Shown here one piece after another: positions 20,330 through 58,197 of a stretch of 64,000 nucleotides of DNA (positions within the stretch are counted from its first letter, which is position 1; the number at the start of each line of letters is the position of its first letter). The notes below the pieces were generated by a model that was given only the letters and a program-made list of their open reading frames with translations, was not told the origin of the DNA and did not search any database. The stretch is taken from IMG/VR virus record IMGVR_UViG_3300020810_001156, positions 188,604-252,603 of that record. One strand, 5' to 3'. The position numbers and the translations under genes are program-made.

Positions 20330-20331
20330 GA

Positions 20332-20646: not shown

Positions 20647-20651
20647 AAATA

Positions 20652-20683
20652 TTTGGATTTTTCCAAAAAATTTCGTATATTAG
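20652..20683 (+). promoter_or_regulatory. Bacteroidota-type promoter
   Basis: TTTG-N20-TATATTAG. Confidence 0.65.
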
Positions 20684-20684
20684 T

Positions 20685-21242: not shown

Positions 21243-21261
21243 AATCTTATATTTATAGTAT

Positions 21262-21510
21262 ATGATTAGATTAACCGAAATATTGAACGAAGGAAAAGAA
21301 CCTGAAATCATTACTCAATTAAGAGATGTATTGAAGAATGGGTATAAAACTCTTAAAGACCCAAAAAGTGGTAAGAGAATGAAAGTGGATACTTACTCAG
21401 CATCTGCAATCGTTGGTGTATATGATAAATTAAATCCATCTAATCAAGAAAAGTTTGTGAAGCAGGGTTTGTTGGGTATGCAATCATTAGCATTTAAATT
21501 TATAAAATAA
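21262..21510 (+). CDS. Small protein with MIRLTEILNE leader
   Basis: Leader shared with the next two ORFs; VDTYSASAI..VYDKLN..NQ module. Confidence 0.6.
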   Translation: MIRLTEILNEGKEPEIITQLRDVLKNGYKTLKDPKSGKRMKVDTYSASAIVGVYDKLNPSNQEKFVKQGLLGMQSLAFKFIK

Positions 21511-21511
21511 A

Positions 21512-22189
21512 GTGATTAAGTTAACTGACATATTAAATGAAGATTGTTGGAAGGGCTACAAACAAATTGGTGGCAAAATGAAGAATGGAAAGATGGTGCC
21601 AAATTGTGTTCCTGAATCGGTTGAAGAAAACTCAATCAATGAAGCTTCAATGACTGTTTCAATTGCAAATGTTGTAGATGAACTTTTTCCAAAGGAATTC
21701 TTTTGGGTTTATAATCCACAAGATAAAGAAAGAGTAAAATCTGTGATTGGTGATTTGGTTAGAACTCTAAATACTTTCTACAAAAAGCAAGGTATTAAAG
21801 TTAGATTTACAGATTCTAATATTAGAATGAAAATGTACACTAAAGAATCGGCAAGAGAGGATTTAACATCTTCAGAGAGATTAGAACTATATAAGTTATA
21901 CTCAAAGGCGATGAAAGCAATGCCACAATCTCCAAACCAAAAAAAGATTATCAAACAAATTAATGTGTTAAGAACCAAAGCTGGTATGAAACCATTAAAA
22001 GAGGTAACTTTGAATGAGATTGGTATTTTTAATATACAAAGTTACACAAAGGGGATTTTACCTGCAGGATATATGGATACAACAACTCCTCAGAAAAAAG
22101 AAAAATATCGTTCAACAGTTAGAGATTTAATGCAAACATTAAATTCTTTTTGGAAAAGAAATAATATACCATTTAGAGTAAGAAAATGA
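21512..22189 (+). CDS. Modular protein with MIKLTDILNE leader and CWKGY..VPNCV module
   Basis: GTG start; internal NSINE and TLNE linkers; duplicated module. Confidence 0.6.
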   Translation: MIKLTDILNEDCWKGYKQIGGKMKNGKMVPNCVPESVEENSINEASMTVSIANVVDELFPKEFFWVYNPQDKERVKSVIGDLVRTLNTFYKKQGIKVRFTDSNIRMKMYTKESAREDLTSSERLELYKLYSKAMKAMPQSPNQKKIIKQINVLRTKAGMKPLKEVTLNEIGIFNIQSYTKGILPAGYMDTTTPQKKEKYRSTVRDLMQTLNSFWKRNNIPFRVRK

Positions 22190-22524
22190 TAAAGTTAGAT
22201 GATTTATTACATGATATCGTAAACCATCCACTAAACGAAGATTTGAGAAAGTGGTTTGGTAAAGGAAAGACTGGTTCATCATCTGGTGGTGGTTGGGATA
22301 GATACGGAACTGATGGACAGAAGTTAGGTAAATGTGGCGATGGTGAAGAAGGTGATGCTTATGCAGCTTGTTTATCTAAAGAAAAGGCAGCTAAGTTAGG
22401 ACCTAAAGGTAGAGCTGCATTTGTAAAAAGAAAAAGAGCTGACCAAAAGAAAGCTGGTGATACTAAAAAAGGTGGAAATAGAAAAAAGGGTAAGACACCT
22501 ACCTTTTCAAAAACAGGTGCATAA
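22186..22524 (+). CDS. Basic protein with MIKLDDLL..PLNE leader
   Basis: EDLRKWF...CG...ACL...KRK module typical of large phages. Confidence 0.6.
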   Translation: MIKLDDLLHDIVNHPLNEDLRKWFGKGKTGSSSGGGWDRYGTDGQKLGKCGDGEEGDAYAACLSKEKAAKLGPKGRAAFVKRKRADQKKAGDTKKGGNRKKGKTPTFSKTGA

Positions 22525-22535
22525 TTGTTATTTTA

Positions 22536-22796
22536 ATGGGTAAAAAATTAGTTACTATAAAGGTAATAAAGGGAGATATTAATCGAGCTCTTAAAAAGTT
22601 TAAACGAGCGTGTTTTGATTCTGGACACTTACAAGAACTTAGGGAAAGGCAAACATATACTAAACCTAAAACAGTAAGAAGAACGAAAAAGTTAGAAGCT
22701 ATCAGAAGGCAAGAGTGGGAAACTTTAAAAGAAAAGATTGATGGTGGGGATACCTCACTAAAATTATCTCCAAGAAAGAAAAAGAAAAAAAGATAA
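22536..22796 (+). CDS. rpsU: Ribosomal protein bS21
   Basis: I.V..GDINRALKKFKR...G.LQELRERQ.Y.KP..RR. Confidence 0.85.
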   Translation: MGKKLVTIKVIKGDINRALKKFKRACFDSGHLQELRERQTYTKPKTVRRTKKLEAIRRQEWETLKEKIDGGDTSLKLSPRKKKKKR

Positions 22797-22813
22797 GGAA
22801 TATTTATTAAGGT

Positions 22814-25300
22814 ATGGCAGATAATGTAAAAATATCAGATTTAACGGAATTAATATCGGGCTCTCTTAGAGATGTTACGATTTTTCCGGTTGTAGATGGT
22901 GGTGCAACCCAAAAAGCTACATTACTATCTCTACAACAATATCTTGCTGATACTTTAGCAACTGATAGTGAATTAACAGCACAAATTTCTAATGTAAATT
23001 CTACAATAAATGGATTGGATACAGATGATATAAGTGAGGGTTCAACTAATCAGTATTATACAAACGCAAGAGTTAATCAAATAATTCAAGGATTAACAAT
23101 CATAAGTGGTTCGGGTCAAATTGAAGATTTAGGATTTATTTCTTCAGGTACTAATATTGGACCACTAAATATATTTACAGCATCTTACTACGAAGATTCT
23201 GCATCCTTTGAGACAAGAATTTTAGCAATATCTGCTAGTAGTGGAGATACTACGCCACAAGGAACTGTATCTAGTTCACAACAAATTACCGATTTAGGGT
23301 TTATACAATCATCAACAATTGATTCTTTATTTATTGCAGATAGATTACCAATTGATATTCTATCTTCATCAGAACAATTAGGACAATTAATTGCAATTAA
23401 TGGTGGTACTAATGTAACTGTTACTTCTGGTAGTGGTGACCAATTAAGTATTGAAATTTCATCTACTGGTGGTGGAGGTGGCGGAGTTGAATATGATTCT
23501 GAATATGAAATCGTTTCACAATCAAACATTACTGATGAATCTAATGCTAGATTGAGTGGTATGTTGATAAGAGCTAATGATGAAACTACATTCGCTAACT
23601 TCTCAGCATCTGTTGCTGCTGGTGCTGGTGGAGGTGGTGGTTCTACTGATTACATTTCAAATGTATCAAACACAATAGCTCATACAATTTCATTTACTGG
23701 AGTTGGTTCAGCATTTAATGGAAGTATAAATCTACCCGATGGTATTGTATCATCATCAACTCAAATTGAAGATTTGGGATTTGCTGGTGGTGGAGAAAAC
23801 ATTATAGTTAGTGGATTACAAGCATATACTCAATCATTAAAATCAGTAGCTATAATTTCTGGCTCACAACAAATTACTGATTTTGGATTCGTTTCAGAAT
23901 CATCAACAACTATTCCACAGGGAACTATTTCTGGTTCACAACAAATTACCGATTTAGGATTTCTTAGTAGTTCAGCCGATTTAACTGGTATTACATCATC
24001 TGCTGGTGTTGTACTTGCTGACGCTGATAACACTGGATTTGATACATCATTTGTAGGAGAGAACCCATCTAACTTATATTATACTGATGCTAGAGTTGAA
24101 ACTCACTTAGGGGTTATAGGTTTATTAACAGGTTCACAAGGATTAGCTAGTGGTTCGGTAACTTCATCCGCACAAATTAATTATGGTGAAATTAGAAATA
24201 TTCCTAAATTTTGGGGTGATGGCGTAACTATATCATCTGGTTCATCAGGTGATACTGCAAATTATATCCAAATTACATCAGCTGGTGGTGGTAGTGGTAC
24301 ATTATCATCCGAGTTCTACTCATTTACCGCATCATATGAATTAGAAAAAGTTAATTTTATAACTGGTTCTTCACAAATTGAAGCTTTAGGATTTGACCCT
24401 AATGCTGGTGAAGTTGTAACTTTAAACGCTTGGACTGGTTCTGGTGGAGCATTTGGTATATTCTCACAATCAGTAGTAAACCAAATTGAAAACTTAGAAA
24501 CTGGTTCACTTACTGATGATTTCAACTCATTATTGGAAAAAGATTTATTCTCAGGTTCTGCTCAAGTTAATTACGCACAAATACCTGATATACCAGACTT
24601 TGTAGCTGGTCCTGGTATAGTAATCGCAATTAGTGGTAGTTCATTTGGACAAACCTTTGAAATTAGTAGTAGTGCAGCTTCTGGAGATTTTACAACATTA
24701 ACTGGAGTTCCAGAAGGATTAGTATCATCATCAACTCAAATTGAAAATTTAGGATTTGCAACAACTGGATACGCTGATGGTGTTGGTACAACAACTTCAC
24801 AATCATTAGAATCAACATTTAATGGATTTAGAGGTGATATAGGTGCTATTCAAGCCGATTACGCTAATTTGGGTGGTAACACATTTACTGGTTCTCAATT
24901 AATCAAAGCTTTAGTAACAGTTGATGAGGTTTATGTAACTGGTTCATTATCTTTAACTTCTGGTGAGGGTAAAATAAAAGTTAATACTGGGATTCCTTCG
25001 GATATAGTACAAATGACTGGTTCATTTAAAGTAACGGGTTCGATTGAAGCAGATGAGTTTATTGTAGGTTCTGCAGGAACACCAACCATTTCATCAGCAA
25101 CTAATATTGAAGTATCGGCATCGGCTGATATTAATATGATAGCTCAGGAAGTTAACATTACTGATGTATTAACAATAACTCCAAGAACAACAACACCTTC
25201 ATCACCATCATCTGGTAGTTTTATTGTAAGTGGTAGTGGAGCAACTATAAAGCCATTCTTCTATGATGGCAATCAATGGCAAGAGATATCATTCGTATAA
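22814..25300 (+). CDS. Ser/Gly/Thr-rich virion structural (tail fibre-like) protein
   Basis: N-terminal VKISDL, TDDISEGSTNQYYTNARV motif, about 10 S[GS]S.Q[IV]..LGF-type repeats, C-terminal FYDGNQW. Confidence 0.7.
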   Translation: MADNVKISDLTELISGSLRDVTIFPVVDGGATQKATLLSLQQYLADTLATDSELTAQISNVNSTINGLDTDDISEGSTNQYYTNARVNQIIQGLTIISGSGQIEDLGFISSGTNIGPLNIFTASYYEDSASFETRILAISASSGDTTPQGTVSSSQQITDLGFIQSSTIDSLFIADRLPIDILSSSEQLGQLIAINGGTNVTVTSGSGDQLSIEISSTGGGGGGVEYDSEYEIVSQSNITDESNARLSGMLIRANDETTFANFSASVAAGAGGGGGSTDYISNVSNTIAHTISFTGVGSAFNGSINLPDGIVSSSTQIEDLGFAGGGENIIVSGLQAYTQSLKSVAIISGSQQITDFGFVSESSTTIPQGTISGSQQITDLGFLSSSADLTGITSSAGVVLADADNTGFDTSFVGENPSNLYYTDARVETHLGVIGLLTGSQGLASGSVTSSAQINYGEIRNIPKFWGDGVTISSGSSGDTANYIQITSAGGGSGTLSSEFYSFTASYELEKVNFITGSSQIEALGFDPNAGEVVTLNAWTGSGGAFGIFSQSVVNQIENLETGSLTDDFNSLLEKDLFSGSAQVNYAQIPDIPDFVAGPGIVIAISGSSFGQTFEISSSAASGDFTTLTGVPEGLVSSSTQIENLGFATTGYADGVGTTTSQSLESTFNGFRGDIGAIQADYANLGGNTFTGSQLIKALVTVDEVYVTGSLSLTSGEGKIKVNTGIPSDIVQMTGSFKVTGSIEADEFIVGSAGTPTISSATNIEVSASADINMIAQEVNITDVLTITPRTTTPSSPSSGSFIVSGSGATIKPFFYDGNQWQEISFV

Positions 25301-42447: not shown

Positions 42448-43071
42448 ATGGAAAACAAAATGAAAAAATACTTAAATTTATTACTACTTATCATCCTATT
42501 TGGATGTACTGCTGAAGCGCAGGAAATCACTCCATCTCAAGACCTGAGAGAAGAGGTAATTGTGGAAACTCCTATCTTTAAAGTGTGGTACTCTGAAGTG
42601 AAGGAACAACCCACAAAAGTGACCTATACGGTCTTATGTCCTACACCCGGTGTGAGTAGAGATGGATTAGATTTTTATACGGAATCGGATTATCATACTT
42701 CGGATGATGATGATTATTATTCTAATCCTTGGGATAAGGGACATATGGCACCTGCTGCGGCATTTAATTGTAGTAGGGATATGTTGAAACAAACATTTAC
42801 TTATCTAAATTCTGCTCTACAATATGAATCTCTAAATAGAGGAGTTTGGAATAAGTTAGAGGAATTTGAAAGAAATCTTGCTAACTTTTATGAAGTTAAT
42901 GTAGAGATACAAATTAACTTTGTAGAGAATCCACCTAAAGTAAGTGGTGGAGCTTCAATACCCGAATCGTTTTTAAAGATAATTAGATGGGGAGATAAAG
43001 AAGAGAGATTTTTATTTCCTAATCAAAATACTTCGGGAACGGATTGGACTGATTATATAGTAATAGATTAG
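42448..43071 (+). CDS. DNA/RNA non-specific endonuclease (NucA-like), probable lipoprotein
   Basis: DKGHMAPA, N..LQ...LNRG.W..LE; lipobox LFGC. Confidence 0.88.
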   Translation: MENKMKKYLNLLLLIILFGCTAEAQEITPSQDLREEVIVETPIFKVWYSEVKEQPTKVTYTVLCPTPGVSRDGLDFYTESDYHTSDDDDYYSNPWDKGHMAPAAAFNCSRDMLKQTFTYLNSALQYESLNRGVWNKLEEFERNLANFYEVNVEIQINFVENPPKVSGGASIPESFLKIIRWGDKEERFLFPNQNTSGTDWTDYIVID

Positions 43072-43090
43072 AAAAAATTAAATAAAGGTT

Positions 43091-44431
43091 ATGATAACAC
43101 CCTTTTCGGTATTAGATACTCGAACAAAGGAATGGAAGAAAAAGAAAGAAGAGTGGATTGCTACCTACGGAATTCAATCTGAGTTAGGTAGGGAGGATAC
43201 CCAATCGAAAACCCAATTTTGGGATTCTCCAACTAACGTTTCTATTTTTGACCCGGTTCTTTGTGAAGTAATGTACGATTGGTTCGTACCGAAGGGTGGA
43301 AAAATCCTAGACCCATTTGCTGGTGGAAGTGTAAGAGGAATCGTAGCTGAAGAAATGGGGTACAAATATGTAGGTATCGACCTTTCTAAAAAACAAATCC
43401 TTGCAAATCAAAAACAAAGTTCAAAACCCTTTTGGATTGATGGAGATGCTGATAAAGTTCTCTTTAATTTAGAAGGTGGATTCGATTTTGTATTTACCTG
43501 CCCTCCTTATTATGATTTAGAAGTGTATTCGGATTCTCCTTATGATTTATCGAATATGAAAGAAAAACAATTTGATGATAAATTGGATTCTATCATTTAT
43601 AAATCTGCTCTGAAGTTGAAAGAGAACCGATTTTTTGGGATTGTGGTAAGTGAGGTGAGAAATCCTTCAACGACTGGGAATTATTCCATAGGTAATTATA
43701 GAGGATTGGTTTGGAAAACAATAAAGATGTGTGAATCACACGGATTGAAGTTCTATAATGATATGATATTATTCAATTCCCAACATCAGGCATCTCGAGT
43801 AGGTAAAACTTACTTTGAAAGAAATAGAAAAATACCATCAGTACATCAAAATGTATTGATATTTGTTAAGGGGAATCCCGATATTGCTACCGAAGAAATC
43901 AAAGGTGGTGAGTTTGAATGTCAAGTAAAGGGTACAAAATACTTGACTTTCAGACACGCTGCTATTTCAATCGACCCAAACAAATTAGTTGCTTCTGAAG
44001 TTAAAAGAAGATGTGTAAGTAGAAAATCAAAATATAAAGATTGGCAGATAATTGGTGAGGAGACTCGACCAGAGATAAAATATGTTATAGGAGATATTCC
44101 ATTTGAATCACCTTTACAAGTTTTGGAAGTTATTCCTGAATTAACTGAATCACAATGTAGAAATTACTTTGAATCAAACTCTAAGAAGTTTCAACATTGG
44201 AAAAGAGTGAATCCATCGGATTGGAATATATCTTATAAACAAATGGAGGATTTATGGAATTTATCTGATAAAGCAGGTGGAATAAGTATTTACTCCGAAA
44301 CCATTCAATGTGGTGATAAAAAATTCATTTCAGTTAACGAAGCTGCAAAGGAATTTGGAATAAGTGGAGAACGAGTTAGACAAAAGTTAAGGTCTGATAA
44401 TTATAAAGACTGGAAATATTTGGATAATTAA
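43091..44431 (+). CDS. N4/N6 DNA methyltransferase with C-terminal NUMOD1-like HTH repeats
   Basis: DPFAGGS, GIDL, TCPPY; tail FISVNEAAKEFGIS. Confidence 0.8.
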   Translation: MITPFSVLDTRTKEWKKKKEEWIATYGIQSELGREDTQSKTQFWDSPTNVSIFDPVLCEVMYDWFVPKGGKILDPFAGGSVRGIVAEEMGYKYVGIDLSKKQILANQKQSSKPFWIDGDADKVLFNLEGGFDFVFTCPPYYDLEVYSDSPYDLSNMKEKQFDDKLDSIIYKSALKLKENRFFGIVVSEVRNPSTTGNYSIGNYRGLVWKTIKMCESHGLKFYNDMILFNSQHQASRVGKTYFERNRKIPSVHQNVLIFVKGNPDIATEEIKGGEFECQVKGTKYLTFRHAAISIDPNKLVASEVKRRCVSRKSKYKDWQIIGEETRPEIKYVIGDIPFESPLQVLEVIPELTESQCRNYFESNSKKFQHWKRVNPSDWNISYKQMEDLWNLSDKAGGISIYSETIQCGDKKFISVNEAAKEFGISGERVRQKLRSDNYKDWKYLDN

Positions 44432-44450
44432 AATAAATTTCGTATATTTG
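44419..44450 (+). promoter_or_regulatory. Bacteroidota-type promoter of the TonB-receptor unit
   Basis: TTTG-N20-TATATTTG. Confidence 0.75.
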
Positions 44451-44468
44451 TAAAATTAAACTAAAAAA

Positions 44469-46445
44469 ATGAAAAAAATATTGGTAATTATGTTGAGTAT
44501 GGTGAGTATTTCCCTATCTGCTCAACAAAGTGATACGACTATCGTATTAGATGATGTAGTAATAACTGCTACTAGAAGTGAGATAAGTTTGGAAGATTCA
44601 CCCGTACCAACGGAAGTGATTGGAAAGAAAGAGATTGAAGAACTAAATTTAATTACGATGCAAGACCTCCTTAATTTAAAAGGATTTGTTGCACCGATGA
44701 AAAGTGGAGGTTTCCAATTAAGAGGATTATCTTCCGAATATGTTTTAGTAATGATTGATGGAGTTCCAATCGCAGGTAGAGAAAGTGGTGCATTAGATAT
44801 CTCGAATATCAACCTTGCAAATGTGGAAAGAGTTGAAATTGTAAAAGGTTCAATGTCTGCACTTTGGGGTAACCATGCAATTGGTGGTGTAATCAACATC
44901 ATTACAAAGAAGAGTGGAGAACCATCTATAATGTTGAATACACAATATGGAACAAACAACACATCATTAGTTGGATTAACTTCAACAGTGGGTAAAGATA
45001 AATTTAAGAACATATCTAAGATTACATTAGGAAGTTCAGATGGTTTTGATATCGACCCATTAACTTATGGTCAAAATCAATTACCATTTAAGTTGTTGAA
45101 TATTACCAATAGAACTACTTACGATGATGGAACGAACCAATACTCATTAGGATTAACTCACTTAGGAAAAACATCCGAAGGTGAAACTGTAACTGAAACA
45201 AATACTCAGGGGCAATTAGTACCAGTTGATGAGGTAAACGAATCCCAAAACTTTATTGTTGATTTGAACTACAAAAGAAGTTTTGGTAAATATGTGAGTG
45301 AGATTAAAGTATCTAATTCAAACTTCAGTAACTCAAACAAATCTTCTTTTGAATATTTCGGACAACAAGTAGTTCAGTTAGATGAGAGTGACCAAAACAT
45401 TTTCCAACCTGAGATGATTAACAATTACAATTGGAATTCTAAAAACTCAACTACATTTGGATTTGGTTATAGAGGACACGATTACGATACTGAAAGATAT
45501 GGTGGTGATAAATCTCTAAACTCTTACTTTGGATATGTTCAACATTATCTAAACTTAGATAAACTAAATTTAGTAGTTGGTGGTAGATACGATAACTATT
45601 CAGATTTTGGAAACAACTTCTCACCAAAAGTATCTGCAACTTATGATTTGGGGAAATTCAAATTGAGTTCATCGGTTGGTTATGGATTCAGAGTACCTGA
45701 TTTTAGAACCTTATACATTAACTATGGTGGATTCTCATCTGGGTATTGGGTATTAGGTTCGTATAACATTGAAGAACAAATCAATTTTTATTCTCAACAA
45801 AATCTAATTGCATTTGTATCTTATGGATTAGAAGATATTACTCAACTAAGTCCTGAAACTTCTATCTCATATGATTTTGGTGTATCGTATAAATTAAATG
45901 AGAGTAGTAAAGTAGGATTAAACTTATTTAGAACCAATACAACTGATTTGATTGAATCAGTTCTTGCTGGAATGTTTGTAAACCAAACTTTACTTTTTGG
46001 ATACACAAATATCTCAGAAGCAACATTTACAGGTTTAGAGTTTGAAACTTTGATTCAAAAAGATAGATTTAGATTTGATGGTTCTTATCAGTATTTAGAA
46101 ACTGAAGCAAATAAAGCAGATGGAACTGAATTCTTTTTGGGTGAAAGACCTAAACATTTAGTTAACCTTGCAACTACTTATACATTGAAGAATGGTTTAT
46201 CATTAACTTTAAATGGAGTTCATAAATCAGAGTACTTCTTTAGAGATGTTGATAGAAGTGGAACTCAGGACGCAAATGAGTTTGTACCTTCTCACACATT
46301 GTTGAATACTTTGATAAGTTCTCCTGTTGTTAAGAATATGACAGTTGGTGTTGGTGTTAACAATATTTTAGATTTTACTAATGTAGAGTATCTAAAACAA
46401 CAAAATGGTAGAACCATTTTTGGAAAAGTAACTTATAAATTTTAA
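44469..46445 (+). CDS. TonB-dependent outer-membrane receptor (CirA/BtuB/HmuR-like)
   Basis: Signal peptide, VVITATR, plug IDGVP...VERVEIVKGS.SALWG..AIGGVINIITK, beta-barrel, C-terminal YKF. Confidence 0.92.
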   Translation: MKKILVIMLSMVSISLSAQQSDTTIVLDDVVITATRSEISLEDSPVPTEVIGKKEIEELNLITMQDLLNLKGFVAPMKSGGFQLRGLSSEYVLVMIDGVPIAGRESGALDISNINLANVERVEIVKGSMSALWGNHAIGGVINIITKKSGEPSIMLNTQYGTNNTSLVGLTSTVGKDKFKNISKITLGSSDGFDIDPLTYGQNQLPFKLLNITNRTTYDDGTNQYSLGLTHLGKTSEGETVTETNTQGQLVPVDEVNESQNFIVDLNYKRSFGKYVSEIKVSNSNFSNSNKSSFEYFGQQVVQLDESDQNIFQPEMINNYNWNSKNSTTFGFGYRGHDYDTERYGGDKSLNSYFGYVQHYLNLDKLNLVVGGRYDNYSDFGNNFSPKVSATYDLGKFKLSSSVGYGFRVPDFRTLYINYGGFSSGYWVLGSYNIEEQINFYSQQNLIAFVSYGLEDITQLSPETSISYDFGVSYKLNESSKVGLNLFRTNTTDLIESVLAGMFVNQTLLFGYTNISEATFTGLEFETLIQKDRFRFDGSYQYLETEANKADGTEFFLGERPKHLVNLATTYTLKNGLSLTLNGVHKSEYFFRDVDRSGTQDANEFVPSHTLLNTLISSPVVKNMTVGVGVNNILDFTNVEYLKQQNGRTIFGKVTYKF

Positions 46446-46452
46446 AAACTAT

Positions 46453-47619
46453 ATGAAAAAGATGATTTTATGTGGATTGATGTTGCTGATGGGTACATCA
46501 TCTTTTGCTTCTCACCTATTGGGTGGGTACATTCAAACAACTCAAAGGAATTCAAGTGATACTGTTGATGTGGTAGTAACTTTATTTACTGACCCTCAAG
46601 GAATTGGTAATCCAACTTCTATTTCTTTAGCGGAATGGAAATTGGTAAATGGTTTTTATCAAACCAATGGTAACTTTACACTTTCTCAACAACTAACTGG
46701 AAGTTGGCAAGGTGTAAATGTGTATGTGTATAGTGGTATTAGAATATTAAGTAGTGGTGATTATCGTTTCATCTACACCAATTGTTGTAGAGGAATGTTG
46801 AGTAACGCATCATCTGCAATGAATAGTAACTTTACTATTGCAATGGATTACAAAAAATCACTTCTACCAAACTCAGCACCTATCATTCTCAACCCACTTC
46901 CAATCAATTGGGTAAATGGTGATACTGCACAATCAATTCTATTTGCGGTAGATGTAGATGGTGATTCGGTAATGGTTGAAAAGGATGATGCTATTAACCA
47001 ACACTCAAACAATACATTTGTACCACTTTCACCATTTACTCAATTAGGTAGTTATGGTAGTTATTATGTGGATGTAAATGGAACAATTGAATGGGCTCCA
47101 AATACCAATGGAACATTTGGTACTGGATATAAAGTAAGTGAAATCAGAAATGGACAAGTTATTGGAGTGAATAGAATTCAACAAGTCTATATGGTTCAAC
47201 CTGGTTCAACACCAAATGTACCAAACTTAAACCCAATGATTACAGCCGATTTGGTAAATGGTGATTCACTTCAATATACCACATCCATTTCAAACGCAAC
47301 TTCAACTGAGTTGATTATTCCAAATGTAGATGTAACTCAAACTTCAGATTCAACTTGGACTTTGAATAATCTTCAAATGGGAACATACAATGGAGTATTG
47401 AGAGCTAGTAGTAACTCATCAAATATGGATTATTACATTACTTTAGTGGTAACATCTACAATCGGAATCGAAGAGAATGTTTCAGATATGGATACTTCTT
47501 ACGAAGTTTACGATTGGACTGGAAAATACATTGGTAAAGATGTAAATTGGGAGCAATTAAATGGTTTGTATATAATTAAACATAGTAACGGAACAATAGA
47601 AAAAATCTACAATATATGA
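46453..47619 (+). CDS. Secreted protein with a T9SS-type C-terminal domain
   Basis: Signal peptide + ASHLLGG, NCCR, NSAP, DVDGDS; tail IGIEE..YDWTGK..GLYIIK..GTIEK. Confidence 0.65.
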   Translation: MKKMILCGLMLLMGTSSFASHLLGGYIQTTQRNSSDTVDVVVTLFTDPQGIGNPTSISLAEWKLVNGFYQTNGNFTLSQQLTGSWQGVNVYVYSGIRILSSGDYRFIYTNCCRGMLSNASSAMNSNFTIAMDYKKSLLPNSAPIILNPLPINWVNGDTAQSILFAVDVDGDSVMVEKDDAINQHSNNTFVPLSPFTQLGSYGSYYVDVNGTIEWAPNTNGTFGTGYKVSEIRNGQVIGVNRIQQVYMVQPGSTPNVPNLNPMITADLVNGDSLQYTTSISNATSTELIIPNVDVTQTSDSTWTLNNLQMGTYNGVLRASSNSSNMDYYITLVVTSTIGIEENVSDMDTSYEVYDWTGKYIGKDVNWEQLNGLYIIKHSNGTIEKIYNI

Positions 47620-48473
47620 AGATATTAGTAACTGGCGGGAACGGCTTTATCGGTTCAAATCTAATTAAGAAACTATTATCTGAAGGACACGAAGTGGTAT
47701 CTTTGGATGATTTATCAACTGGGTTAAAAGAGTACGAAGTTGAAGGATGTAATTATGTTTATGGAGATATTGAAAATCTTCTGTATTGGAAAGGTGAATC
47801 TTTTGATTTATGTTATCATCTCGCTGCGTTAGCTAGAATCGTTCCATCATTTGAGGACCCGATGGAAACCTTTAGAGTAGACACTCAAGGTGTAATGGTA
47901 GTTGCTGAATGGGCTAGACAAAATAATGTAAAGGTTGTATATAGTGGTTCATCATCTCGTTGGTGTAATCCCGAAACTTCACCATATGCAACTTGTAAAA
48001 AATTAGGTGAAGATATTCTCAAAATGTATCGAACTGCTTATGGATGTGATTTTGAAATCGCAAGATTCTATAATGTATATGGACCAAATGAATTGGTTGA
48101 TGGACAGTGGGCAGCTGTGATTGGTATTTGGAGAAAACAAATCGAAGAAGGTAAACCAATCACAATTATATCAGATGGAGAACAAAGAAGAGATTTTACT
48201 CATGTAGATGATATTTGTGATGCTCTATATAAGATTGGTACAAGTGATAAAAAGCATGAAGATGCTTGGGAATTGGGTACAGGTATGAATTACTCAATTA
48301 ATGAAGTATTTGATTTCTTCCAAGAATCATTTGGTGATTTGGAAAAAGTACATCTGCCTGATGTACCAGGAAATTATAGACAAACTCTTAGAGAGAATGA
48401 TGATACTTTGGAGAGATTGGAATGGGCACCCAAAGATAGTTTAAGAGATTATATTTTATCTCTTAACAAGTAA
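47616..48473 (+). CDS. NAD-dependent sugar epimerase/dehydratase
   Basis: TGGNGFIG, YATCK, RFYNVYGP, RDFTHV. Confidence 0.9.
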   Translation: MKILVTGGNGFIGSNLIKKLLSEGHEVVSLDDLSTGLKEYEVEGCNYVYGDIENLLYWKGESFDLCYHLAALARIVPSFEDPMETFRVDTQGVMVVAEWARQNNVKVVYSGSSSRWCNPETSPYATCKKLGEDILKMYRTAYGCDFEIARFYNVYGPNELVDGQWAAVIGIWRKQIEEGKPITIISDGEQRRDFTHVDDICDALYKIGTSDKKHEDAWELGTGMNYSINEVFDFFQESFGDLEKVHLPDVPGNYRQTLRENDDTLERLEWAPKDSLRDYILSLNK

Positions 48474-49430: not shown

Positions 49431-50333
49431 ATGAGAATAGTAGTTACAGGCGGTTGTGGGTTTATTGGTTCATCTTTTGTAAATCTTATAAATAAAGTTC
49501 CAAATACTGAAATAGTTGTTATAGATAAATTAACCTATGCAGCTAATCCATTTTTAATTTCCAAAGATATACCTCTTATTAAAAAAGATATTTGTGATAT
49601 CACTTTAGATGATATTGGATATGCTGATTATATTGTAAACTTTGCTGCTGAATCTCATGTTGATAATTCAATCTCAAATGGATTACCTTTTGTGAAAACT
49701 AATGTAGAAGGTACATTCAATATGTTAGAGGTTGCTAGAAAAATTCCTAACCTAAAGAAGTTCATTCAAATATCTACTGATGAGGTTTATGGTGATATGG
49801 AAAGTAGAAATATTATGGAAGCTAATGAAAACACATCATTAGAACCATCCTCTTATTATTCAGCTACTAAAGCAGCAGCTGACCATTTAGTTGAATCTGC
49901 TGGTAGAACTTATGGTTTACCTTATTTAATTACGAGAACTTGTAACAATTATGGTGTAAATCAACACCACGAAAAATTCTTACCTACAATAGCTAAATCA
50001 ATCAAAGAAGATAAACCAATTCCTCTTTATGGAGATGGTAAACAAATGAGAGAGTGGATTTGGGTTGAAGATAATGTTCAATTGATTTATGATTTGATGA
50101 TATCACAAAACGGAATATGGAATATTGGTAGTGGAGATACTTGGACTAATAGAAGTATCGTTCAACAAATTGGAGTGATTCTAAATAAAAAAGTAAAGTT
50201 AGAGCATGTTGAAGATAGATTAGGACATGATAGAAGGTACTCAATAAATTTCAGTAAATTGATGCACTTCAAAAATAGCTATAACATAACCACAAAAAAT
50301 TTAGAAAAATTTCTTACAGAAACATTTGGATAA
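49431..50333 (+). CDS. rfbB: dTDP-glucose 4,6-dehydratase
   Basis: DKLTYA, FAAESHVD, STDEVYG, YSATK, NNYG, DRLGHDRRY. Confidence 0.92.
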   Translation: MRIVVTGGCGFIGSSFVNLINKVPNTEIVVIDKLTYAANPFLISKDIPLIKKDICDITLDDIGYADYIVNFAAESHVDNSISNGLPFVKTNVEGTFNMLEVARKIPNLKKFIQISTDEVYGDMESRNIMEANENTSLEPSSYYSATKAAADHLVESAGRTYGLPYLITRTCNNYGVNQHHEKFLPTIAKSIKEDKPIPLYGDGKQMREWIWVEDNVQLIYDLMISQNGIWNIGSGDTWTNRSIVQQIGVILNKKVKLEHVEDRLGHDRRYSINFSKLMHFKNSYNITTKNLEKFLTETFG

Positions 50334-51942: not shown

Positions 51943-52524
51943 GTGAAAAACCTAATAGTAATAGGACATCCTAACAAAGATTCATTTTGCTATAATGGTA
52001 TTATGAAAACCATTAAACGGGAACTTCGTAAACACAATGAACCAATCAAAGTTATTGATTTGTATAGAGATTCCTTTGCGAGACCAAGAACCGATTTGGT
52101 TAAAAGATATCAAGAATTAGTAACTTGGTCAGATAGAATTTATTTTATCTCACCAGTTTGGTGGTTTAGATTAACTCCACGAATGGAAGTATTCTTTGAT
52201 GAAGTATTCACACCAGGATTTGCTTATAACTTTGTAAACATTACAAAATTATATGCTTATCCTAAACCACATTTAAGTGATAAAAAAGTTAGAACTTATA
52301 TCACACATGGAGCACCTTCATTACCAGTTAGAACTTTGTATCTTAACTCAGTCAAACTAAGATTGGTGTTGGGTGTATTTACTTTTGTATTTGGTTGGAA
52401 GTTGGGTAGATGGAGAAAAACTAAACAATTTTGGTCAGTACCATTTGTATCTGATGAAAAGAGAAGAAAGTACTTACAACGAGTTAAAAAAGATGTTAGA
52501 AAAGATTTAAAGTTTGAAATATGA
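51943..52524 (+). CDS. Flavodoxin-fold NAD(P)H:quinone oxidoreductase (MdaB-like)
   Basis: GHPNKDSF, IDLY, PVWW, D.VF.PGFAY. Confidence 0.85.
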   Translation: MKNLIVIGHPNKDSFCYNGIMKTIKRELRKHNEPIKVIDLYRDSFARPRTDLVKRYQELVTWSDRIYFISPVWWFRLTPRMEVFFDEVFTPGFAYNFVNITKLYAYPKPHLSDKKVRTYITHGAPSLPVRTLYLNSVKLRLVLGVFTFVFGWKLGRWRKTKQFWSVPFVSDEKRRKYLQRVKKDVRKDLKFEI

Positions 52525-53565: not shown

Positions 53566-54393
53566 ATGAGTAACATAGAAAAACAATATCAAGGTATCCT
53601 CAGAAAGTTGGTACTTTATGGAAAAGAAAAGGGAGATAGAACTGGAACTGGAACTCTATCTTACTTTGGGGAACAAATCAGACACAATATGGCTGATGGA
53701 TTTCCACTTCTTACTACAAAGAAGATGGCTATTAAATCTGTAATGACTGAACTAAAATGGTTTCTAAAAGGAAGAACTGATATCCAATATTTGAGAGATA
53801 ATAATTGTAAAATTTGGGATGGTGATTATGAAAAGAGTGGTAGAACCGATGGAACATTAGGGCCAATCTATGGTAAGCAATGGAGAGATTGGGATGGTAG
53901 ACAAGAACGGGATGGTTCTTATGATATGAGCCTTGACCAAATTGCTAATCTGATATTTCTATTGAAAAGAAATCCAGACTCAAGGCGTTTAATGGTTAAT
54001 GCTTGGAATGTAGGTGAGTTAAATGAAATGGTTCTACCACCTTGCCACTACGGATTCCAATGTTATGTATCTGAAGGTAAACTATCTCTAATGTGGAATC
54101 AGAGAAGTGTAGATACGTTCTTAGGTTTACCATTTAACATTGCAAGTTATGGAACACTACTCCTTTTATTATGTGAAGAGACAGGGTTACAACCTGGTGA
54201 ACTGATTGGGAACTTAGGTGATGTACATTTATATAAGAATCACATTCAACAAGCAAAAGAACAAATTGTAAGAGAACCATATAAGTTACCAACTATTGAA
54301 CTTTCAAATGTGGATATACTTAAAGGAGAGTTCGATTACGAAATCAAAGATTATGAATATCACCCAAGTATAAAGGCACCATTAAGTAACTAA
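53566..54393 (+). CDS. thyA: Thymidylate synthase
   Basis: DRTGTGT, FPLLTTKK, LPPCH, QRSVD..LGLPFN, D.H.Y.NH. Confidence 0.96.
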   Translation: MSNIEKQYQGILRKLVLYGKEKGDRTGTGTLSYFGEQIRHNMADGFPLLTTKKMAIKSVMTELKWFLKGRTDIQYLRDNNCKIWDGDYEKSGRTDGTLGPIYGKQWRDWDGRQERDGSYDMSLDQIANLIFLLKRNPDSRRLMVNAWNVGELNEMVLPPCHYGFQCYVSEGKLSLMWNQRSVDTFLGLPFNIASYGTLLLLLCEETGLQPGELIGNLGDVHLYKNHIQQAKEQIVREPYKLPTIELSNVDILKGEFDYEIKDYEYHPSIKAPLSN

Positions 54394-54603: not shown

Positions 54604-54786
54604 ATGAAAAAATTCAAAAGAAGTAAATTAAATAGAAAATTAAGTGGAATTTGTGGAGGATTGGGTGATTACTTTGATACTGACCCATTACTTTGGAGAT
54701 TATTATTTGTATTACTATTCTTTATCCCCGCAATTCCAATTTTTATTCTATACATCATAACAACATTAATAACTGAATCCGAATGA
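54604..54786 (+). CDS. pspC: PspC-domain membrane protein
   Basis: RS..NR.LSGICGGLGDYF..DP...RLLFV. Confidence 0.85.
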   Translation: MKKFKRSKLNRKLSGICGGLGDYFDTDPLLWRLLFVLLFFIPAIPIFILYIITTLITESE

Positions 54787-55298
54787 AACCATTAAAAGAA
54801 GCAACGCACGATAAACACAAAGAGGCTGAAAGAATGTTGTTCAACACTAAAATGTTCAAAGGTGAATTAAGTGTAGAACAATATACAAAGTATCTTCTTT
54901 CACAATTAGAAATCTTCTCAACTATTGAAGAAAACTTTGAAATGCCACACAATGGATTGAGAAGAAAAGAAGCAGTTATGAAAGATTTAAAAGGAATGGG
55001 TGTAAGACAATTAGAAATCTCAGACCCTGCTACTTTAAATTATACTACATATCTGAGAGGATTATCACAAGAGGATATTAATCCACATATTTATCTTAAC
55101 TATCTTGCGATTATGTTTGGTGGACAGATGATGAAAAAAAATACACCCGGTCCTGGTAATATGTATGATTTCGATAACATGATGGAGTCAATGCAATCAG
55201 TTAGAAATATACAAAAAGATGAGTGGGCAGATGAAGTGAATCGTGGATTTGATTTTATGATTGATATATTTAAAGAGTTAGAAAAATGTATAAACTAA
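54783..55298 (+). CDS. Heme oxygenase (Ho1/HemO-like)
   Basis: LKEAT.DKH..AE, L.R......DL, H.Y..YLA.MFGGQ. Confidence 0.88.
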   Translation: MKPLKEATHDKHKEAERMLFNTKMFKGELSVEQYTKYLLSQLEIFSTIEENFEMPHNGLRRKEAVMKDLKGMGVRQLEISDPATLNYTTYLRGLSQEDINPHIYLNYLAIMFGGQMMKKNTPGPGNMYDFDNMMESMQSVRNIQKDEWADEVNRGFDFMIDIFKELEKCIN

Positions 55299-55957
55299 AA
55301 GATAGAATATTCCATCATTCAGAAAAGTTCAAAAATCTAATTGAACAACAAGAGGGTGTTCAGTTAATTGATACTGATGATTATGGTTGGGAAAACTATC
55401 GTTATGAAAATGATAGATTCAGACTTGCCCATGTTGAACGATATTCTCATATGGGATTGGAGGTTGTACACATAACTTGTTTTCCAAGAGAAAACTCAAA
55501 GATGCCTGTTTTTGGATTTGATGTAGTTGGATATCAAAACGATGAAAAAGAAATGTCAAAAATTAGTGGAGTGTTTATTGATTGGTCACCAATCTTAACT
55601 CACGATAAATGGCACGATACTCAATGGAACAAAGATAGAAAGTTACCTTATTGGGCAACTGTATTTTCAGAAGATTTTATAGCAGTAAGACCTACTGAAG
55701 ATGAATACGAAAAAGTATTCGAAGTTGGGTTTGATGCATTCGAAAGATGGTTAGAAAGATTAAATACCGATGAGGATTTAACTGATGATGTAAGTGAGAT
55801 TGAACAAATTATTGAAAGGCAAAACACTTATTGTGAACATCAAGCATCAAACAAACGAACAATGGGTGCTTTAACTGCTAACATTGGAGAGGAAAAAGCA
55901 AGACATTTTATGACAGAAGTTCTATTCCCTAAGATAAAAACTGACAATTTGTCATAA
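55286..55957 (+). CDS. Ferredoxin-dependent bilin reductase (PcyA/PcyX-like)
   Basis: FRLAHVE, VVHITCFP, PVFGFDVV, DWSP, R.LP.W..VFS, Q..YC..Q..N..T...L, FM.EVLFP. Confidence 0.85.
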   Translation: MYKLKDRIFHHSEKFKNLIEQQEGVQLIDTDDYGWENYRYENDRFRLAHVERYSHMGLEVVHITCFPRENSKMPVFGFDVVGYQNDEKEMSKISGVFIDWSPILTHDKWHDTQWNKDRKLPYWATVFSEDFIAVRPTEDEYEKVFEVGFDAFERWLERLNTDEDLTDDVSEIEQIIERQNTYCEHQASNKRTMGALTANIGEEKARHFMTEVLFPKIKTDNLS

Positions 55958-56277: not shown

Positions 56278-56568
56278 ATGGCAAATATTGGTAAACCCCT
56301 TGCAGATAGGGTTCTTCTTAAATTAGAAGATGTATCTGAATCAAAATCAAGTGGTGGTATTATACTCAACACAACCACACAAACCATTCAAACTGCGGAA
56401 GTAGTTGAAGTATCCGATGGATTTATTGGAAACAATGGTGAATTAATCAAATTAAGTGTAAATAGAGGTGATAAAGTTCTCATCAATAACGGAGCTGGGC
56501 AAAAGGTAAAGTTAGATGGAGTAGATTATCACTTAGTTAGAGAATCAGAAATTTTAATGGTAGTATAA
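56278..56568 (+). CDS. groES: Co-chaperonin GroES
   Basis: PLADRV, SGGIIL, GDKVL, RESEIL. Confidence 0.92.
   Translation: MANIGKPLADRVLLKLEDVSESKSSGGIILNTTTQTIQTAEVVEVSDGFIGNNGELIKLSVNRGDKVLINNGAGQKVKLDGVDYHLVRESEILMVV

Positions 56569-58197
<1,629 letters not shown>

What the first reader, a model, noticed from the sequence alone, without database searches (positions are those of the whole stretch)
44469..46445. Full-length TonB-dependent receptor in a phage genome, possibly linked to heme/iron capture
Seen: an intact receptor with its own host-type promoter, and heme oxygenase plus bilin reductase 8 kb downstream. Established: such receptors import heme, siderophores or B12, and heme oxygenase releases iron. 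Inference: a phage-encoded uptake-to-release route for iron, or alternatively a B12 importer or a receptor decoy. The substrate cannot be read from the sequence.
Basis: partly seen in the sequence, partly recalled or inferred. Interest (0 to 1): 0.7.

Follow-up and report, generated by a model that had tools for sequence, protein, structure and literature searches.

The report
Phage-borne heme-type outer-membrane receptor
A 253-kb marine phage that probably infects flavobacteria carries its own intact TonB-dependent outer-membrane transporter of the heme-receptor lineage, genetically tied to the phage's heme oxygenase, which suggests that the virus makes infected cells scavenge heme for iron.

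Summary
Window 44469-46445 (+) encodes an intact 658-aa TonB-dependent receptor: signal peptide, TonB box, plug, 22-strand barrel. The genome is a real 252.6-kb phage, and heme oxygenase plus a PcyX-like bilin reductase lie 8.3 kb downstream. A chimeric assembly is excluded.

The "host-type promoter" is a Bacteroidota-type -33/-7 element that occurs 14 times in the genome.

The receptor belongs to a phage-only clade: at least 68% identity inside it, at most 35% to any cellular protein, median dN/dS 0.17. Two trees nest this clade among Bacteroidota receptors that are always followed by an HmuY hemophore gene, and apart from E. coli BtuB, CirA and FepA. None of ten nearest cellular loci has a cobalamin riboswitch.

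In a related phage lineage, heme oxygenase, bilin reductase, a small ORF and the receptor form one tight cassette.

The best reading is a virus-encoded heme (tetrapyrrole) importer that feeds the viral heme oxygenase. This is inferred, not shown. The phage has no HmuY partner, the classic heme-receptor motifs are only partly present, and transcript evidence is weak.

The phage also carries a second receptor of 906 aa.

The parts
44419..44450 (+). Promoter-like element of Bacteroidota type: -33 TTTG (44419-44422), 20-nt spacer, -7 TATATTTG (44443-44450). The extended phage motif TTCGTATATTTG lies at 44439-44450, 18 nt before the ATG. The A-rich leader has no Shine-Dalgarno sequence.
   Evidence: 9 matches in the window against 2.3 expected; the extended motif occurs 14 times in the genome against 0.25 expected, always on the + strand; the motif or a near variant lies upstream of the receptor in 35 of 38 distinct relatives.
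44469..46445 (+). Gene for the 658-aa TonB-dependent receptor (P0001), stop codon included
44469..44522 (+). Signal peptide (aa 1-18, MKKILVIMLSMVSISLSA; cleavage predicted before QQ)
   Evidence: Read from the sequence. AlphaFold2 gives a helix at aa 2-13 followed by a disordered stretch.
44550..44576 (+). TonB-box-like segment DDVVITATR (aa 28-36)
   Evidence: Read from the sequence by analogy with the E. coli BtuB segment DTLVV, read here. V30, A34, T35 and R36 are invariant in 34 clade members. Mean conservation is 0.81 in 52 genes.
44589..44891 (+). Plug domain (aa 41-141)
   Evidence: Pfam PF07715, E 3e-21. It is the most conserved part of the clade, at 0.94.
44925..46439 (+). 22-strand beta-barrel (aa 153-657), with a long extracellular loop 7 (aa 409-462) that begins with FRVP; the protein ends in Phe
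   Evidence: Pfam PF00593. DSSP on the AlphaFold2 model shows 22 strands. Foldseek gives TM 0.70-0.77 to BtuB, Cir, PhuR and FepA.
46453..47619 (+). Accessory gene P0282 (388 aa): a secreted protein of tandem Ig-like beta-sandwiches. It is present next to the receptor in only some relatives. It is not HmuY-like, and no link to the receptor was shown.
   Evidence: Its depth is about 2.4 times that of the receptor in DNA runs.
54783..55298 (+). Heme oxygenase (171 aa). The motif around the proximal His, LKEATHDKHKEAE, is present.
   Evidence: Pfam PF01126, E 1e-12
55286..55957 (+). Ferredoxin-dependent bilin reductase, PcyX-like (223 aa); it overlaps the heme oxygenase gene by 13 nt
   Evidence: Pfam PF05996, E 3e-23. 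The best solved relative is PcyX_EBK42635, 5OWG, E 1e-19.

Best explanation
The gene encodes a working TonB-dependent outer-membrane transporter that the phage has made in the infected cell. The host is probably a marine member of the Flavobacteriaceae.

Proposed steps:
1. The gene is transcribed from a phage promoter that looks like a host (Bacteroidota) primary-sigma promoter.
2. The protein is exported by Sec, inserted by the host BAM machinery and energised by host TonB-ExbBD.
3. It imports a tetrapyrrole, most likely heme, from outside the cell.
4. Host periplasmic and inner-membrane carriers bring the heme into the cytoplasm.
5. The phage heme oxygenase opens the ring and releases iron. 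The phage PcyX-like reductase removes the biliverdin product.
6. The iron could serve iron-requiring phage and host enzymes, for example the phage class I ribonucleotide reductase R2 subunit.

Shown here: an intact, conserved, selected transporter gene in a phage; its place in the HmuY-linked receptor lineage; and its physical linkage to heme oxygenase and the bilin reductase in two different gene orders.

Inferred: the substrate, expression during infection, use of host TonB and inner-membrane transport, and the fate of the iron.
For: Intact architecture and a good model.

Phage identity.

The gene is old and kept in the phage lineage:
- More than 120 protein clusters at 70-95% identity, nearly all 648-662 aa long.
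- One 50% cluster in 1.8 billion representatives; the next relative is at 34%.
- At most 35% identity in 401 Flavobacteriaceae genomes.
- Median dN/dS 0.17 over 52 distinct genes. Conservation is 0.94 for the plug, 0.84 for the outer loops, 0.82 for the strands and 0.81 for the TonB box.

Lineage:
- The phage clade is sister to P0135 (SH-like 97, SH-aLRT 98). It lies inside a clade whose named members all have an HmuY gene next to them, across a 95-96% split from E. coli BtuB, CirA and FepA.
- 16 of 17 immediately downstream genes of the nearest cellular relatives are Pfam HmuY. My own HMM finds an adjacent HmuY-like gene at the other full-length homologues whose ORFs could be read.
- Other neighbours include Peripla_BP_2, FecCD, ABC transporter and ABM monooxygenase genes.
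- In Flavobacterium psychrophilum, a receptor (HfpR) followed by an HmuY-like gene (HfpY) is a proven heme uptake system, and the receptor alone supports growth on hemin (bioRxiv 10.1101/2022.04.04.486927).

Linkage:
- Heme oxygenase and the bilin reductase lie 5-9 kb downstream in 21 of 22 relatives with enough flank.
- In a related phage lineage (receptor 81%, AAA ATPase 73% identical) the order is SOD, a 297-aa ORF, HemO, bilin reductase, a 78-aa ORF, then the receptor. All lie on one strand, and the receptor ATG overlaps the preceding stop. This was seen in 5 contigs from 5 samples.

Against B12: no cobalamin riboswitch, and a class I ribonucleotide reductase with R2.

The phage was active in the sampled marsh: major capsid protein RNA depth is 10-20 times the DNA depth and falls sharply at the gene end.
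Against: No curated receptor family cut-off is reached. TonB-hemin scores 140 bits against 317 needed, and TonB-B12 scores highest at 161 against 600.

The classic heme-receptor signature is only partly present. FRVP stands for FRAP, but loop 7 (aa 409-462) has no histidine, and DITQL stands where NxxL is expected (motif definition).

The phage has no HmuY. It also has no periplasmic binding protein, FecCD permease, ferredoxin, ferritin, TonB or ExbB, so most of the route must come from the host.

The stem of the phage clade is long (1.0-1.15 changes per site), so the substrate may have changed.

The sequence of F. psychrophilum HfpR itself was not in my trees.

Structure and PDB sequence searches do not discriminate: BtuB, Cir, PhuR and FepA all score about the same.

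In metatranscriptome assemblies the receptor has a depth of only about 4 against 200-1700 for the capsid gene. That is similar to its neighbours and not clearly above possible DNA carry-over.

In this window the genes between the receptor and the heme oxygenase are unrelated: epimerases, thymidylate synthase and others.

Genomes with the closest relatives of the phage's other receptor lack this receptor family. They might also lack the inner-membrane heme carrier.
Confidence: 0.45

Rival explanations
1. It is a working TonB-dependent importer, but for a substrate other than heme: a corrinoid (B12), a ferric siderophore, or another metal complex. After its long separate evolution in phages, its substrate need not match that of its HmuY-linked relatives.
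For: The best NCBIfam score is TonB-B12 (161 bits), and the top Foldseek hit is E. coli BtuB (E 2e-32). The best PDB sequence hit is the colicin I receptor Cir, over the plug only. JGI labels clade members as ferrienterochelin/colicin receptors. The clade stem is long and the phage has no HmuY. The classic heme histidine is missing. The nearest relative, P0135, sits beside copper-handling genes: SCO1, an LpqE-like gene and DUF411.
Against: All family scores are far below their cut-offs, and the hits cover conserved plug and barrel features only. The trees separate the clade from BtuB, CirA and FepA at 95-96% support. There is no cobalamin riboswitch in ten nearest cellular loci or in the window. 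The phage ribonucleotide reductase is iron-dependent, not B12-dependent. The operon-like cassette with heme oxygenase and the bilin reductase in relatives is hard to explain for a ligand that is not a tetrapyrrole.
Confidence: 0.25
2. It is not there to feed the cell. It may remodel the infected cell's surface in one of three ways: as a superinfection-exclusion device that masks or replaces a receptor used by competing phages, as a sink for host TonB, or as a decoy that binds phages or bacteriocins.
For: TonB-dependent receptors are common phage and colicin receptors (established knowledge). [quoted passage not shown] This phage carries two different receptors. No partner lipoprotein and no downstream transport genes are phage-encoded.
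Against: Selection is strongly purifying (dN/dS 0.17). The plug and TonB box, which are the transport machinery, are the best conserved parts. The outer loops are as conserved as the membrane strands, with no sign of an arms race. The tight cassette with heme oxygenase and the bilin reductase in a related lineage points to metabolism.
Confidence: 0.15
3. It is an artefact: a bacterial gene joined to phage DNA by misassembly, or a piece of host DNA in a mis-binned contig.
For: TonB-dependent receptors are typical cellular genes. The hits in the public phage collection were bacterial contaminants.
Against: Unitigs from two independent DNA runs bridge both junctions without a mismatch, at an even depth of about 20x. 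Thirteen runs hold at least 92% of the stretch. The same methylase-receptor-epimerase order recurs in dozens of assemblies from different studies, on contigs up to 267 kb. The gene has the phage's own GC content, strand and promoter motif. No cellular genome holds a close copy.
Confidence: 0.01

Closest known systems
HfpR-HfpY of Flavobacterium psychrophilum and the wider group of Bacteroidota receptors paired with an HmuY-like hemophore (including HmuR-HmuY of Porphyromonas gingivalis)
   Same: It has a plug-and-barrel TonB-dependent receptor architecture. It nests inside the clade of receptors that have an adjacent HmuY-family gene. Loop 7 is long and conserves the FRAP/NxxL motifs only partly, which the authors also report for HfpR. 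HfpR can use hemin without its hemophore in vitro.
   Different: It is encoded by a phage. It has no HmuY partner anywhere in the genome. Identity to any cellular member is only 27-35%, on a long stem. It lacks the N-terminal carboxypeptidase-regulatory-like extension that its nearest relative P0135 and many other members have. Its promoter is a phage consensus element; the hfp operon by contrast responds to iron. Function was not tested.
Phage heme oxygenase / PcyX bilin reductase cassette of uncultured marine phages (Ledermann et al. 2016, cited from my own knowledge; PMC11480375)
   Same: The heme oxygenase and bilin reductase genes overlap. The reductase is closest to the solved PcyX structure 5OWG. 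The cassette lies in a marine phage whose host is not a cyanobacterium. Its purpose is regarded as open, with iron supply discussed.
   Different: Here the cassette is linked to a phage-encoded outer-membrane receptor of the heme-receptor lineage. It lies 8 kb away in this genome and directly adjacent in a related lineage. I found no paper in the searchable library that holds both PcyX and TonB. There is no AlaS gene here.
TonB-dependent receptors reported in huge phages (SusC-like in marine megaphage Mar_Mega_1, PMC9723777; the Lak phage receptor and 1,603 outer-membrane proteins in bioRxiv 10.64898/2026.10.24.761521)
   Same: A 22-strand receptor encoded by a large phage with a predicted Bacteroidota host.
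   Different: Those were read as SusC-type glycan importers or as surface-remodelling proteins. This one is a small receptor of 658 aa with no SusC match, placed in the HmuY-linked lineage and tied to heme catabolism genes. The second receptor of this phage (P0403, 906 aa) is the one that resembles the SusC-like cases.
E. coli BtuB, CirA and FepA
   Same: Same fold, with TM 0.70-0.77. The plug sequences are similar.
   Different: They fall on the other side of a 95-96% supported split. Family scores are far below the cut-offs. There is no riboswitch.

Membership tests
TonB-dependent transporter superfamily | N-terminal plug domain (PF07715) inside a 22-strand beta-barrel (PF00593) | tested here: met
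   Plug E 3e-21 and barrel E 3e-35. AlphaFold2 gives pLDDT 88.9 and 22 strands. Foldseek TM is 0.70-0.77 to solved transporters.
TonB-dependent transporter superfamily | Signal peptide, TonB box near the mature N-terminus, and a C-terminal aromatic residue | tested here: met
   Sequence reading: signal peptide aa 1-18, DDVVITATR at aa 28-36, terminal Phe. The TonB box is conserved across the clade.
Heme/hemoglobin TonB-dependent receptors (TIGR01785, TIGR01786; HemR/ShuA/HmuR type) | Score above the curated family cut-off | tested here: not met
   140.5 bits against 316.9 needed, and 121.4 against 323.8
Heme/hemoglobin TonB-dependent receptors | FRAP and NxxL (NPNL) boxes with a conserved histidine in loop 7 | tested here: not met
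   FRVP is present at aa 407-410, but loop 7 (aa 409-462) has no His, and DITQL stands for NxxL. The same partial pattern is reported for the functional HfpR.
HmuY-linked receptor lineage of Bacteroidota/FCB (HfpR/HmuR-like) | Phylogenetic placement inside the clade | tested here: met
   FastTree with 131 rows and IQ-TREE with 61 rows: nested with 96-98% support and sister to P0135
HmuY-linked receptor lineage of Bacteroidota/FCB | Adjacent HmuY-family hemophore gene | tested here: not met
   No PF14064 match in the phage genome. No match to my HmuY HMM in the genome or in 87 related phage loci. Present next to 16 of 17 nearest cellular relatives.
HmuY-linked receptor lineage of Bacteroidota/FCB | Binds and imports heme | not testable with these tools
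   This needs binding or complementation assays.
BtuB cobalamin receptors | Family score, cobalamin riboswitch upstream, and clustering with BtuB | tested here: not met
   161 bits against 600 needed, and 105 against 836. No Rfam cobalamin match in the window or in 10 nearest cellular loci. Separated from BtuB in both trees.
Catecholate siderophore receptors (CirA/FepA) | Family score and clustering | tested here: not met
   76-82 bits against 493-745 needed. On the other side of the 95-96% split.
SusC/RagA glycan transporters | N-terminal carboxypeptidase-regulatory-like extension, SusC family match, SusD partner | tested here: not met
   No such domain and no TIGR04056 match for P0001. The downstream gene P0282 is a protein of Ig-like repeats, not SusD. 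The phage's other receptor, P0403, does have the extension.
Phage HemO-PcyX cassette | Adjacent or overlapping heme oxygenase and four-electron bilin reductase genes, with the reductase closer to PcyX than to PcyA | tested here: met
   PF01126 and PF05996. The genes overlap by 13 nt. PcyX 5OWG scores E 1e-19 against 3e-15 for PcyA. The product, PEB or PCB, is not testable here.

The most novel reading that the evidence does not exclude
A cosmopolitan group of marine jumbo phages of Flavobacteriaceae carries a virus-specific heme transporter that works together with the viral heme oxygenase and PcyX. During infection it would give the cell a heme-scavenging route that the likely streamlined hosts do not have themselves. 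That would explain why phages of non-photosynthetic bacteria carry heme oxygenase and bilin reductase genes: the cassette would serve iron piracy, not pigment synthesis.
Probability: 0.3. Interest if true: 0.75.

Novelty: new variant of a known kind. Interest (0 to 1): 0.62.

Why it matters
Heme oxygenase / PcyX cassettes in phages of non-photosynthetic marine bacteria have had no accepted purpose. The authors of the latest study write that they can only speculate and mention iron supply (PMC11480375).

A phage-encoded receptor of the heme-receptor lineage, kept under selection and fused into one cassette with those genes in a sister lineage, turns that speculation into a concrete, testable pathway: viral heme piracy.

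Heme is a relevant iron source in iron-poor seawater. The clade occurs in Tara Oceans, coastal and salt-marsh assemblies, so the effect on iron cycling by infected flavobacteria could be widespread.

The finding also adds a clear case to the emerging picture that large phages rebuild the host outer membrane. It gives a host lead (small-genome Flavobacteriaceae) for an uncultured jumbo phage group.

Tried and rejected
Searches that found nothing or did not discriminate:
- Nucleotide and protein searches of the public phage collection found no relative of the receptor. The protein hits were bacterial contaminants filed as phages.
- IMG/VR scans gave only three related loci. The metagenome scan was needed.
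- The PDB sequence search and Foldseek did not discriminate between substrates.
- NCBIfam gave only sub-threshold hits, for the phage protein and for 39 relatives.

The downstream gene P0282:
- I suspected it was a partner lipoprotein (HmuY- or BtuG-like) or type IX secretion cargo.
- hhalign against HmuY gave probability 0.4%.
- Pfam and NCBIfam found no C-terminal sorting domain.
- The fold is tandem Ig-like domains, with only weak structural likeness to gliding-motility and T9SS-domain proteins.
- It is absent from most relatives. I dropped it as part of the system.

The small ORF before the receptor in the cassette lineage is not HemP-like by Pfam.

Other negative results:
- An E. coli-type promoter scan gave no excess.
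- No tRNAs were found for host inference.
- No glutamyl-tRNA reductase in this genome.

Expression: metatranscriptome contigs cover the receptor at a depth of about 4. This tracks its neighbours and cannot be told from DNA carry-over, so I do not claim expression.

I sent no complex prediction. No protein-protein claim needed one, and a ligand job gives no verdict.
Full report
**What is there.** The window is the last 64 kb of a 252,603-bp virus record (Ga0181598_1000003). CheckV rates it complete. GC is about 32% and almost all genes lie on the + strand.

The record is a real tailed phage. The large terminase (G000 94537-96117), portal (97004-98764), major head protein (105614-107230) and a baseplate wedge protein match PHROG families with E-values from 1e-16 to 1e-73. 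The head protein is 52% identical to that of Flavobacterium phage vB_FspM_immuto and of Microcystis phage Mel-JY01, and 39% to Rhodothermus phage RM378. There are no tRNAs.

**The receptor.** ORF 44469..46445 (+) encodes 658 aa with Pfam Plug (E 3e-21) and TonB-dependent receptor barrel (E 3e-35). Reading the sequence gives a signal peptide (aa 1-18), a TonB-box-like DDVVITATR (aa 28-36) and a terminal Phe.

An AlphaFold2 model built on 141 sequences has pLDDT 88.9 and pTM 0.86, and shows a plug and 22 strands. Foldseek matches BtuB, Cir, PhuR, PirA and FepA about equally (E 1e-29 to 1e-32, TM 0.70-0.77). The fold is therefore certain, but it does not tell the substrate. The same holds for the PDB sequence search, which aligns little more than the plug, and for NCBIfam, where nothing reaches a cut-off. 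The best scores are TonB-B12 at 161 bits against 600 needed and TonB-hemin at 140 against 317.

**Promoter.** The gap to the upstream methylase gene is only 37 nt. An E. coli-type scan shows no excess. The Bacteroidota consensus does: TTTG, 19-21 nt, TAnnTTTG occurs 9 times in the window against 2.3 expected. One copy lies at 44419-44450.

Its extended form TTCGTATNTTTG occurs 14 times in the genome. All copies are on the + strand. In 12 of them an ORF starts within 150 nt downstream, five of them exactly 18 nt before the start codon. Only 0.25 copies are expected by chance. The same element, or a one-base variant, precedes the receptor in 35 of 38 distinct relatives.

No transcription start was mapped.

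**Not a chimera.** Thirteen salt-marsh DNA runs hold at least 92% of the sampled words of 43000-47700. In two of them, unitigs run from the methylase into the receptor (43000-44626) and from the receptor into the next gene (45674-46482) without a mismatch, at an even depth of about 20x. The order methylase, receptor, epimerase recurs in Tara Oceans and many other assemblies.

**A phage-specific clade under selection.**
- The word-index search returned more than 120 clusters at 70-95% identity, nearly all 648-662 aa long, on contigs up to 267 kb.
- In the exhaustive search of 1.84 billion representatives, the clade collapses into one 50% cluster plus a few fragment representatives. The next protein is 34% identical.
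- No species genome scanned held a closer copy. In 401 Flavobacteriaceae genomes the best match was 35%.
- Fifty-two distinct gene sequences give a median dN/dS of 0.17.
- The plug is the most conserved part (0.94). The outer loops (0.84) are as conserved as the strands (0.82), and the TonB box scores 0.81.

This is the pattern of a transporter in use, not of a decaying passenger gene or a surface protein in an arms race.

**Which lineage.** The best full-length cellular relatives (27-34% identity) come mostly from Bacteroidota and neighbouring phyla: Flavobacterium, Maribacter, Chitinophagaceae, Schleiferiaceae, Rhodothermales, Ignavibacteria and Poribacteria.

The gene immediately downstream is an HmuY-family gene (PF14064) in 16 of 17 cases. 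An HMM built from these finds an adjacent HmuY-like gene at the other full-length homologues whose ORFs could be read. It finds none in the phage genome or in 87 related phage loci.

A FastTree of 131 receptors and an IQ-TREE (LG+C20+F+G4, PMSF) of 61 agree:
- A split with 95-96% support puts the phage clade and nearly all HmuY-adjacent receptors on one side.
- E. coli BtuB, CirA and FepA and their relatives fall on the other side. In the FastTree, three Alteromonadaceae-type rows with only weak HmuY-like hits also fall there.
- The phage clade is sister to P0135 (97-98%) within a 96-98% supported subclade.
- The Porphyromonas HmuR-like receptor is on the same side but further out.

Other recurrent neighbours of the cellular relatives are Peripla_BP_2, FecCD and ABC transporter genes, PepSY_TM and ABM monooxygenases. 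None of ten such loci, nor the window, has a cobalamin riboswitch.

In Flavobacterium psychrophilum, a receptor (HfpR) followed by an HmuY-like hemophore (HfpY) is a proven heme uptake system. HfpR supports growth on hemin even without HfpY. Its loop 7 is long and conserves the FRAP/NxxL motifs only partly (bioRxiv 10.1101/2022.04.04.486927). The phage protein shows the same partial pattern: FRVP is present, loop 7 has 54 residues with no histidine, and DITQL stands in place of NxxL. I could not put the HfpR sequence itself into the tree.

**Link to heme oxygenase.** The 171-aa heme oxygenase (54783..55298, PF01126) and the 223-aa bilin reductase (55286..55957, PF05996) overlap by 13 nt. The reductase's best solved relative is PcyX 5OWG.

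Among 22 related loci with at least 9 kb of downstream flank, 21 have both genes 5-9 kb after the receptor. That alone is weak evidence, because these loci share one conserved backbone and the genes in between are unrelated.

The stronger evidence is a second arrangement. In contigs L089 and L192-L196, from five samples, the order is Fe/Mn superoxide dismutase, a 297-aa ORF, heme oxygenase, bilin reductase, a 78- or 103-aa ORF, then the receptor. All lie on one strand. The receptor's ATG overlaps the preceding stop, and the 12-kb locus held for L192 has no copy of the promoter motif. That phage is a relative: its receptor is 81% identical, its AAA ATPase 73% and its large neighbouring protein 52%.

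Two gene orders that keep these genes together, one of them operon-like, argue for a shared function.

**What the phage does not bring.** It has no TonB, ExbB, HmuY, periplasmic binding protein, FecCD permease, 2Fe-2S ferredoxin or ferritin. The outer-membrane step and the cytoplasmic ring-opening step would be viral; everything between would be the host's. The phage ribonucleotide reductase is class I with an R2 subunit, which needs iron and not B12.

**Host.** Four lines point to Bacteroidota, most likely Flavobacteriaceae:
- The promoter type.
- The relatives of the receptor.
- The nearest cultured phage.
- A second phage receptor, described next.

That second receptor (P0403) lies at G000 20180-22900 on the minus strand. 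It is 906 aa long, with a carboxypeptidase-regulatory-like extension, a plug and a barrel. It is conserved at 85-97% in related phage contigs. It has 67-75% identical homologues in Flavobacteriaceae genomes, most of them small (1.5-2.4 Mb). Five of those genomes have no relative of the first receptor at E 1e-20. The family was found in only 75 of 401 Flavobacteriaceae genomes. The phage may therefore add a capability its host lacks. This is a lead, not a result, because the host is not identified and these genomes may be incomplete.

**Expression.** The metatranscriptome libraries reflect real transcription. In run X14 the capsid gene region has depth 200-1700 against about 21-25 in DNA, and depth falls to about 13 right after the gene's stop. 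The receptor is covered at a depth of about 4, like the methylase beside it, and DNA depth there is about 20. That fits a weakly or early expressed gene, but it cannot be told from DNA carry-over. I count it as inconclusive.

**The gene after the receptor.** P0282 (46453..47619) is a secreted protein of tandem Ig-like domains. It is not HmuY-like. It is present in only a few relatives, and there it is nearly identical even where the receptor is only 78% identical. It has more than twice the receptor's depth in the DNA runs. It is a mobile accessory gene, and I do not count it as part of the system.

**Prior knowledge.** Receptors in huge phages have been reported:
- A SusC-like one in the marine megaphage Mar_Mega_1 (PMC9723777).
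- A Lak phage receptor, within a survey of 1,603 phage outer-membrane barrels (bioRxiv 10.64898/2026.10.24.761521).

Phage heme oxygenase/PcyX cassettes are also known, and their role in phages of heterotrophs is called speculative, with iron supply mentioned (PMC11480375). No paper in the searchable library contains both PcyX and TonB.

The new element is the combination: a phage-only branch of the heme-receptor lineage, without its hemophore, tied to the viral heme-degrading genes.

**Verdict.** A working importer of some kind is about 70% likely. The finding is a new variant of known kinds and gives a testable answer to an open question about phage heme oxygenases.

Noticed in passing
Outside the window: G000 20180-22900, minus strand (L007:180-2900): A second TonB-dependent receptor in the same phage (906 aa, P0403). 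It has a carboxypeptidase-regulatory-like N-terminal extension, a plug and a barrel, and it is the only large minus-strand gene. It is conserved at 85-97% in related phage contigs next to a DEAD-box helicase gene. Homologues at 67-75% identity occur in Flavobacteriaceae genomes, most of them small (1.5-2.4 Mb). This is the best host lead.
   Followed up: partly
Loci L089 and L192-L196 (for example L192:7949-12361): A related phage lineage has a tight same-strand cassette: Fe/Mn superoxide dismutase, a 297-aa unknown ORF, heme oxygenase, bilin reductase, a 78/103-aa ORF, then the receptor. The receptor start overlaps the preceding stop.
   Followed up: yes
Whole genome; in the window at 2767, 14355, 29452, 31210, 40407 and 44439: A 12-nt motif, TTCGTATNTTTG, with TTTG(G) about 17-20 nt upstream, occurs 14 times. 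All copies are on the + strand, and in 12 an ORF starts within 150 nt downstream. Only 0.25 are expected by chance. It is probably the phage's class of host-RNA-polymerase promoters, of Bacteroidota -33/-7 type.
   Followed up: partly
window 46453-47619: A secreted 388-aa protein of tandem Ig-like domains. It is present after the receptor in only some relatives and is 97-99% identical even where the receptor is 78% identical. Its read depth is about 2.4 times that of its neighbours, so it looks like a mobile accessory gene shared between co-occurring phage strains.
   Followed up: partly
Locus L191:9163-10173: A related phage contig carries a glutamyl-tRNA reductase gene (GlutR_N plus Shikimate_DH), the first step of C5 tetrapyrrole synthesis, next to the second receptor. 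No such gene is in this genome.
   Followed up: partly
window 56278-58197: Phage-encoded GroES (96 aa) and GroEL (541 aa, Cpn60 E 1e-75) lie directly after the bilin reductase region. They are conserved in relatives.
   Followed up: no
window 43091-44431: The upstream gene combines an N6/N4 DNA methylase domain with a weak match to the I-TevI DNA-binding domain at its C-terminus. The receptor's -33 element lies inside its last codons.
   Followed up: no
window 47616-48473, 49431-50333, 51943-52524 and 53566-54393: Between the receptor and the heme oxygenase lie two NAD-dependent epimerase/dehydratase genes, an AAA_28 kinase-like gene, a Flavodoxin_2/FMN-reductase-like gene and thymidylate synthase. 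Relatives also carry serine hydroxymethyltransferase and an S1-P1 nuclease. The flavoprotein could be an electron donor for the heme oxygenase, but nothing shows this.
   Followed up: no
Outside the window: G000 110811-125297, 126219-139991 and 142082-153682: Three giant ORFs of 4828, 4590 and 3866 aa lie in a row on the + strand. They were not examined.
   Followed up: no
L011:4400-7213 (G000 104400-107213): In metatranscriptome run X14 the major capsid gene region has depth 200-1700 against about 21-25 in DNA runs, and depth falls to about 13 just past the gene's stop. The phage was actively replicating in the sampled salt marsh.
   Followed up: yes
Locus L016:4367-5960: The nearest cellular relative of the receptor (P0135, with an HmuY gene after it) sits beside copper-handling genes: SCO1/SenC, an LpqE-like gene, DUF411 and a cation efflux gene. 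This is a reminder that the substrate of this subclade is not settled.
   Followed up: no
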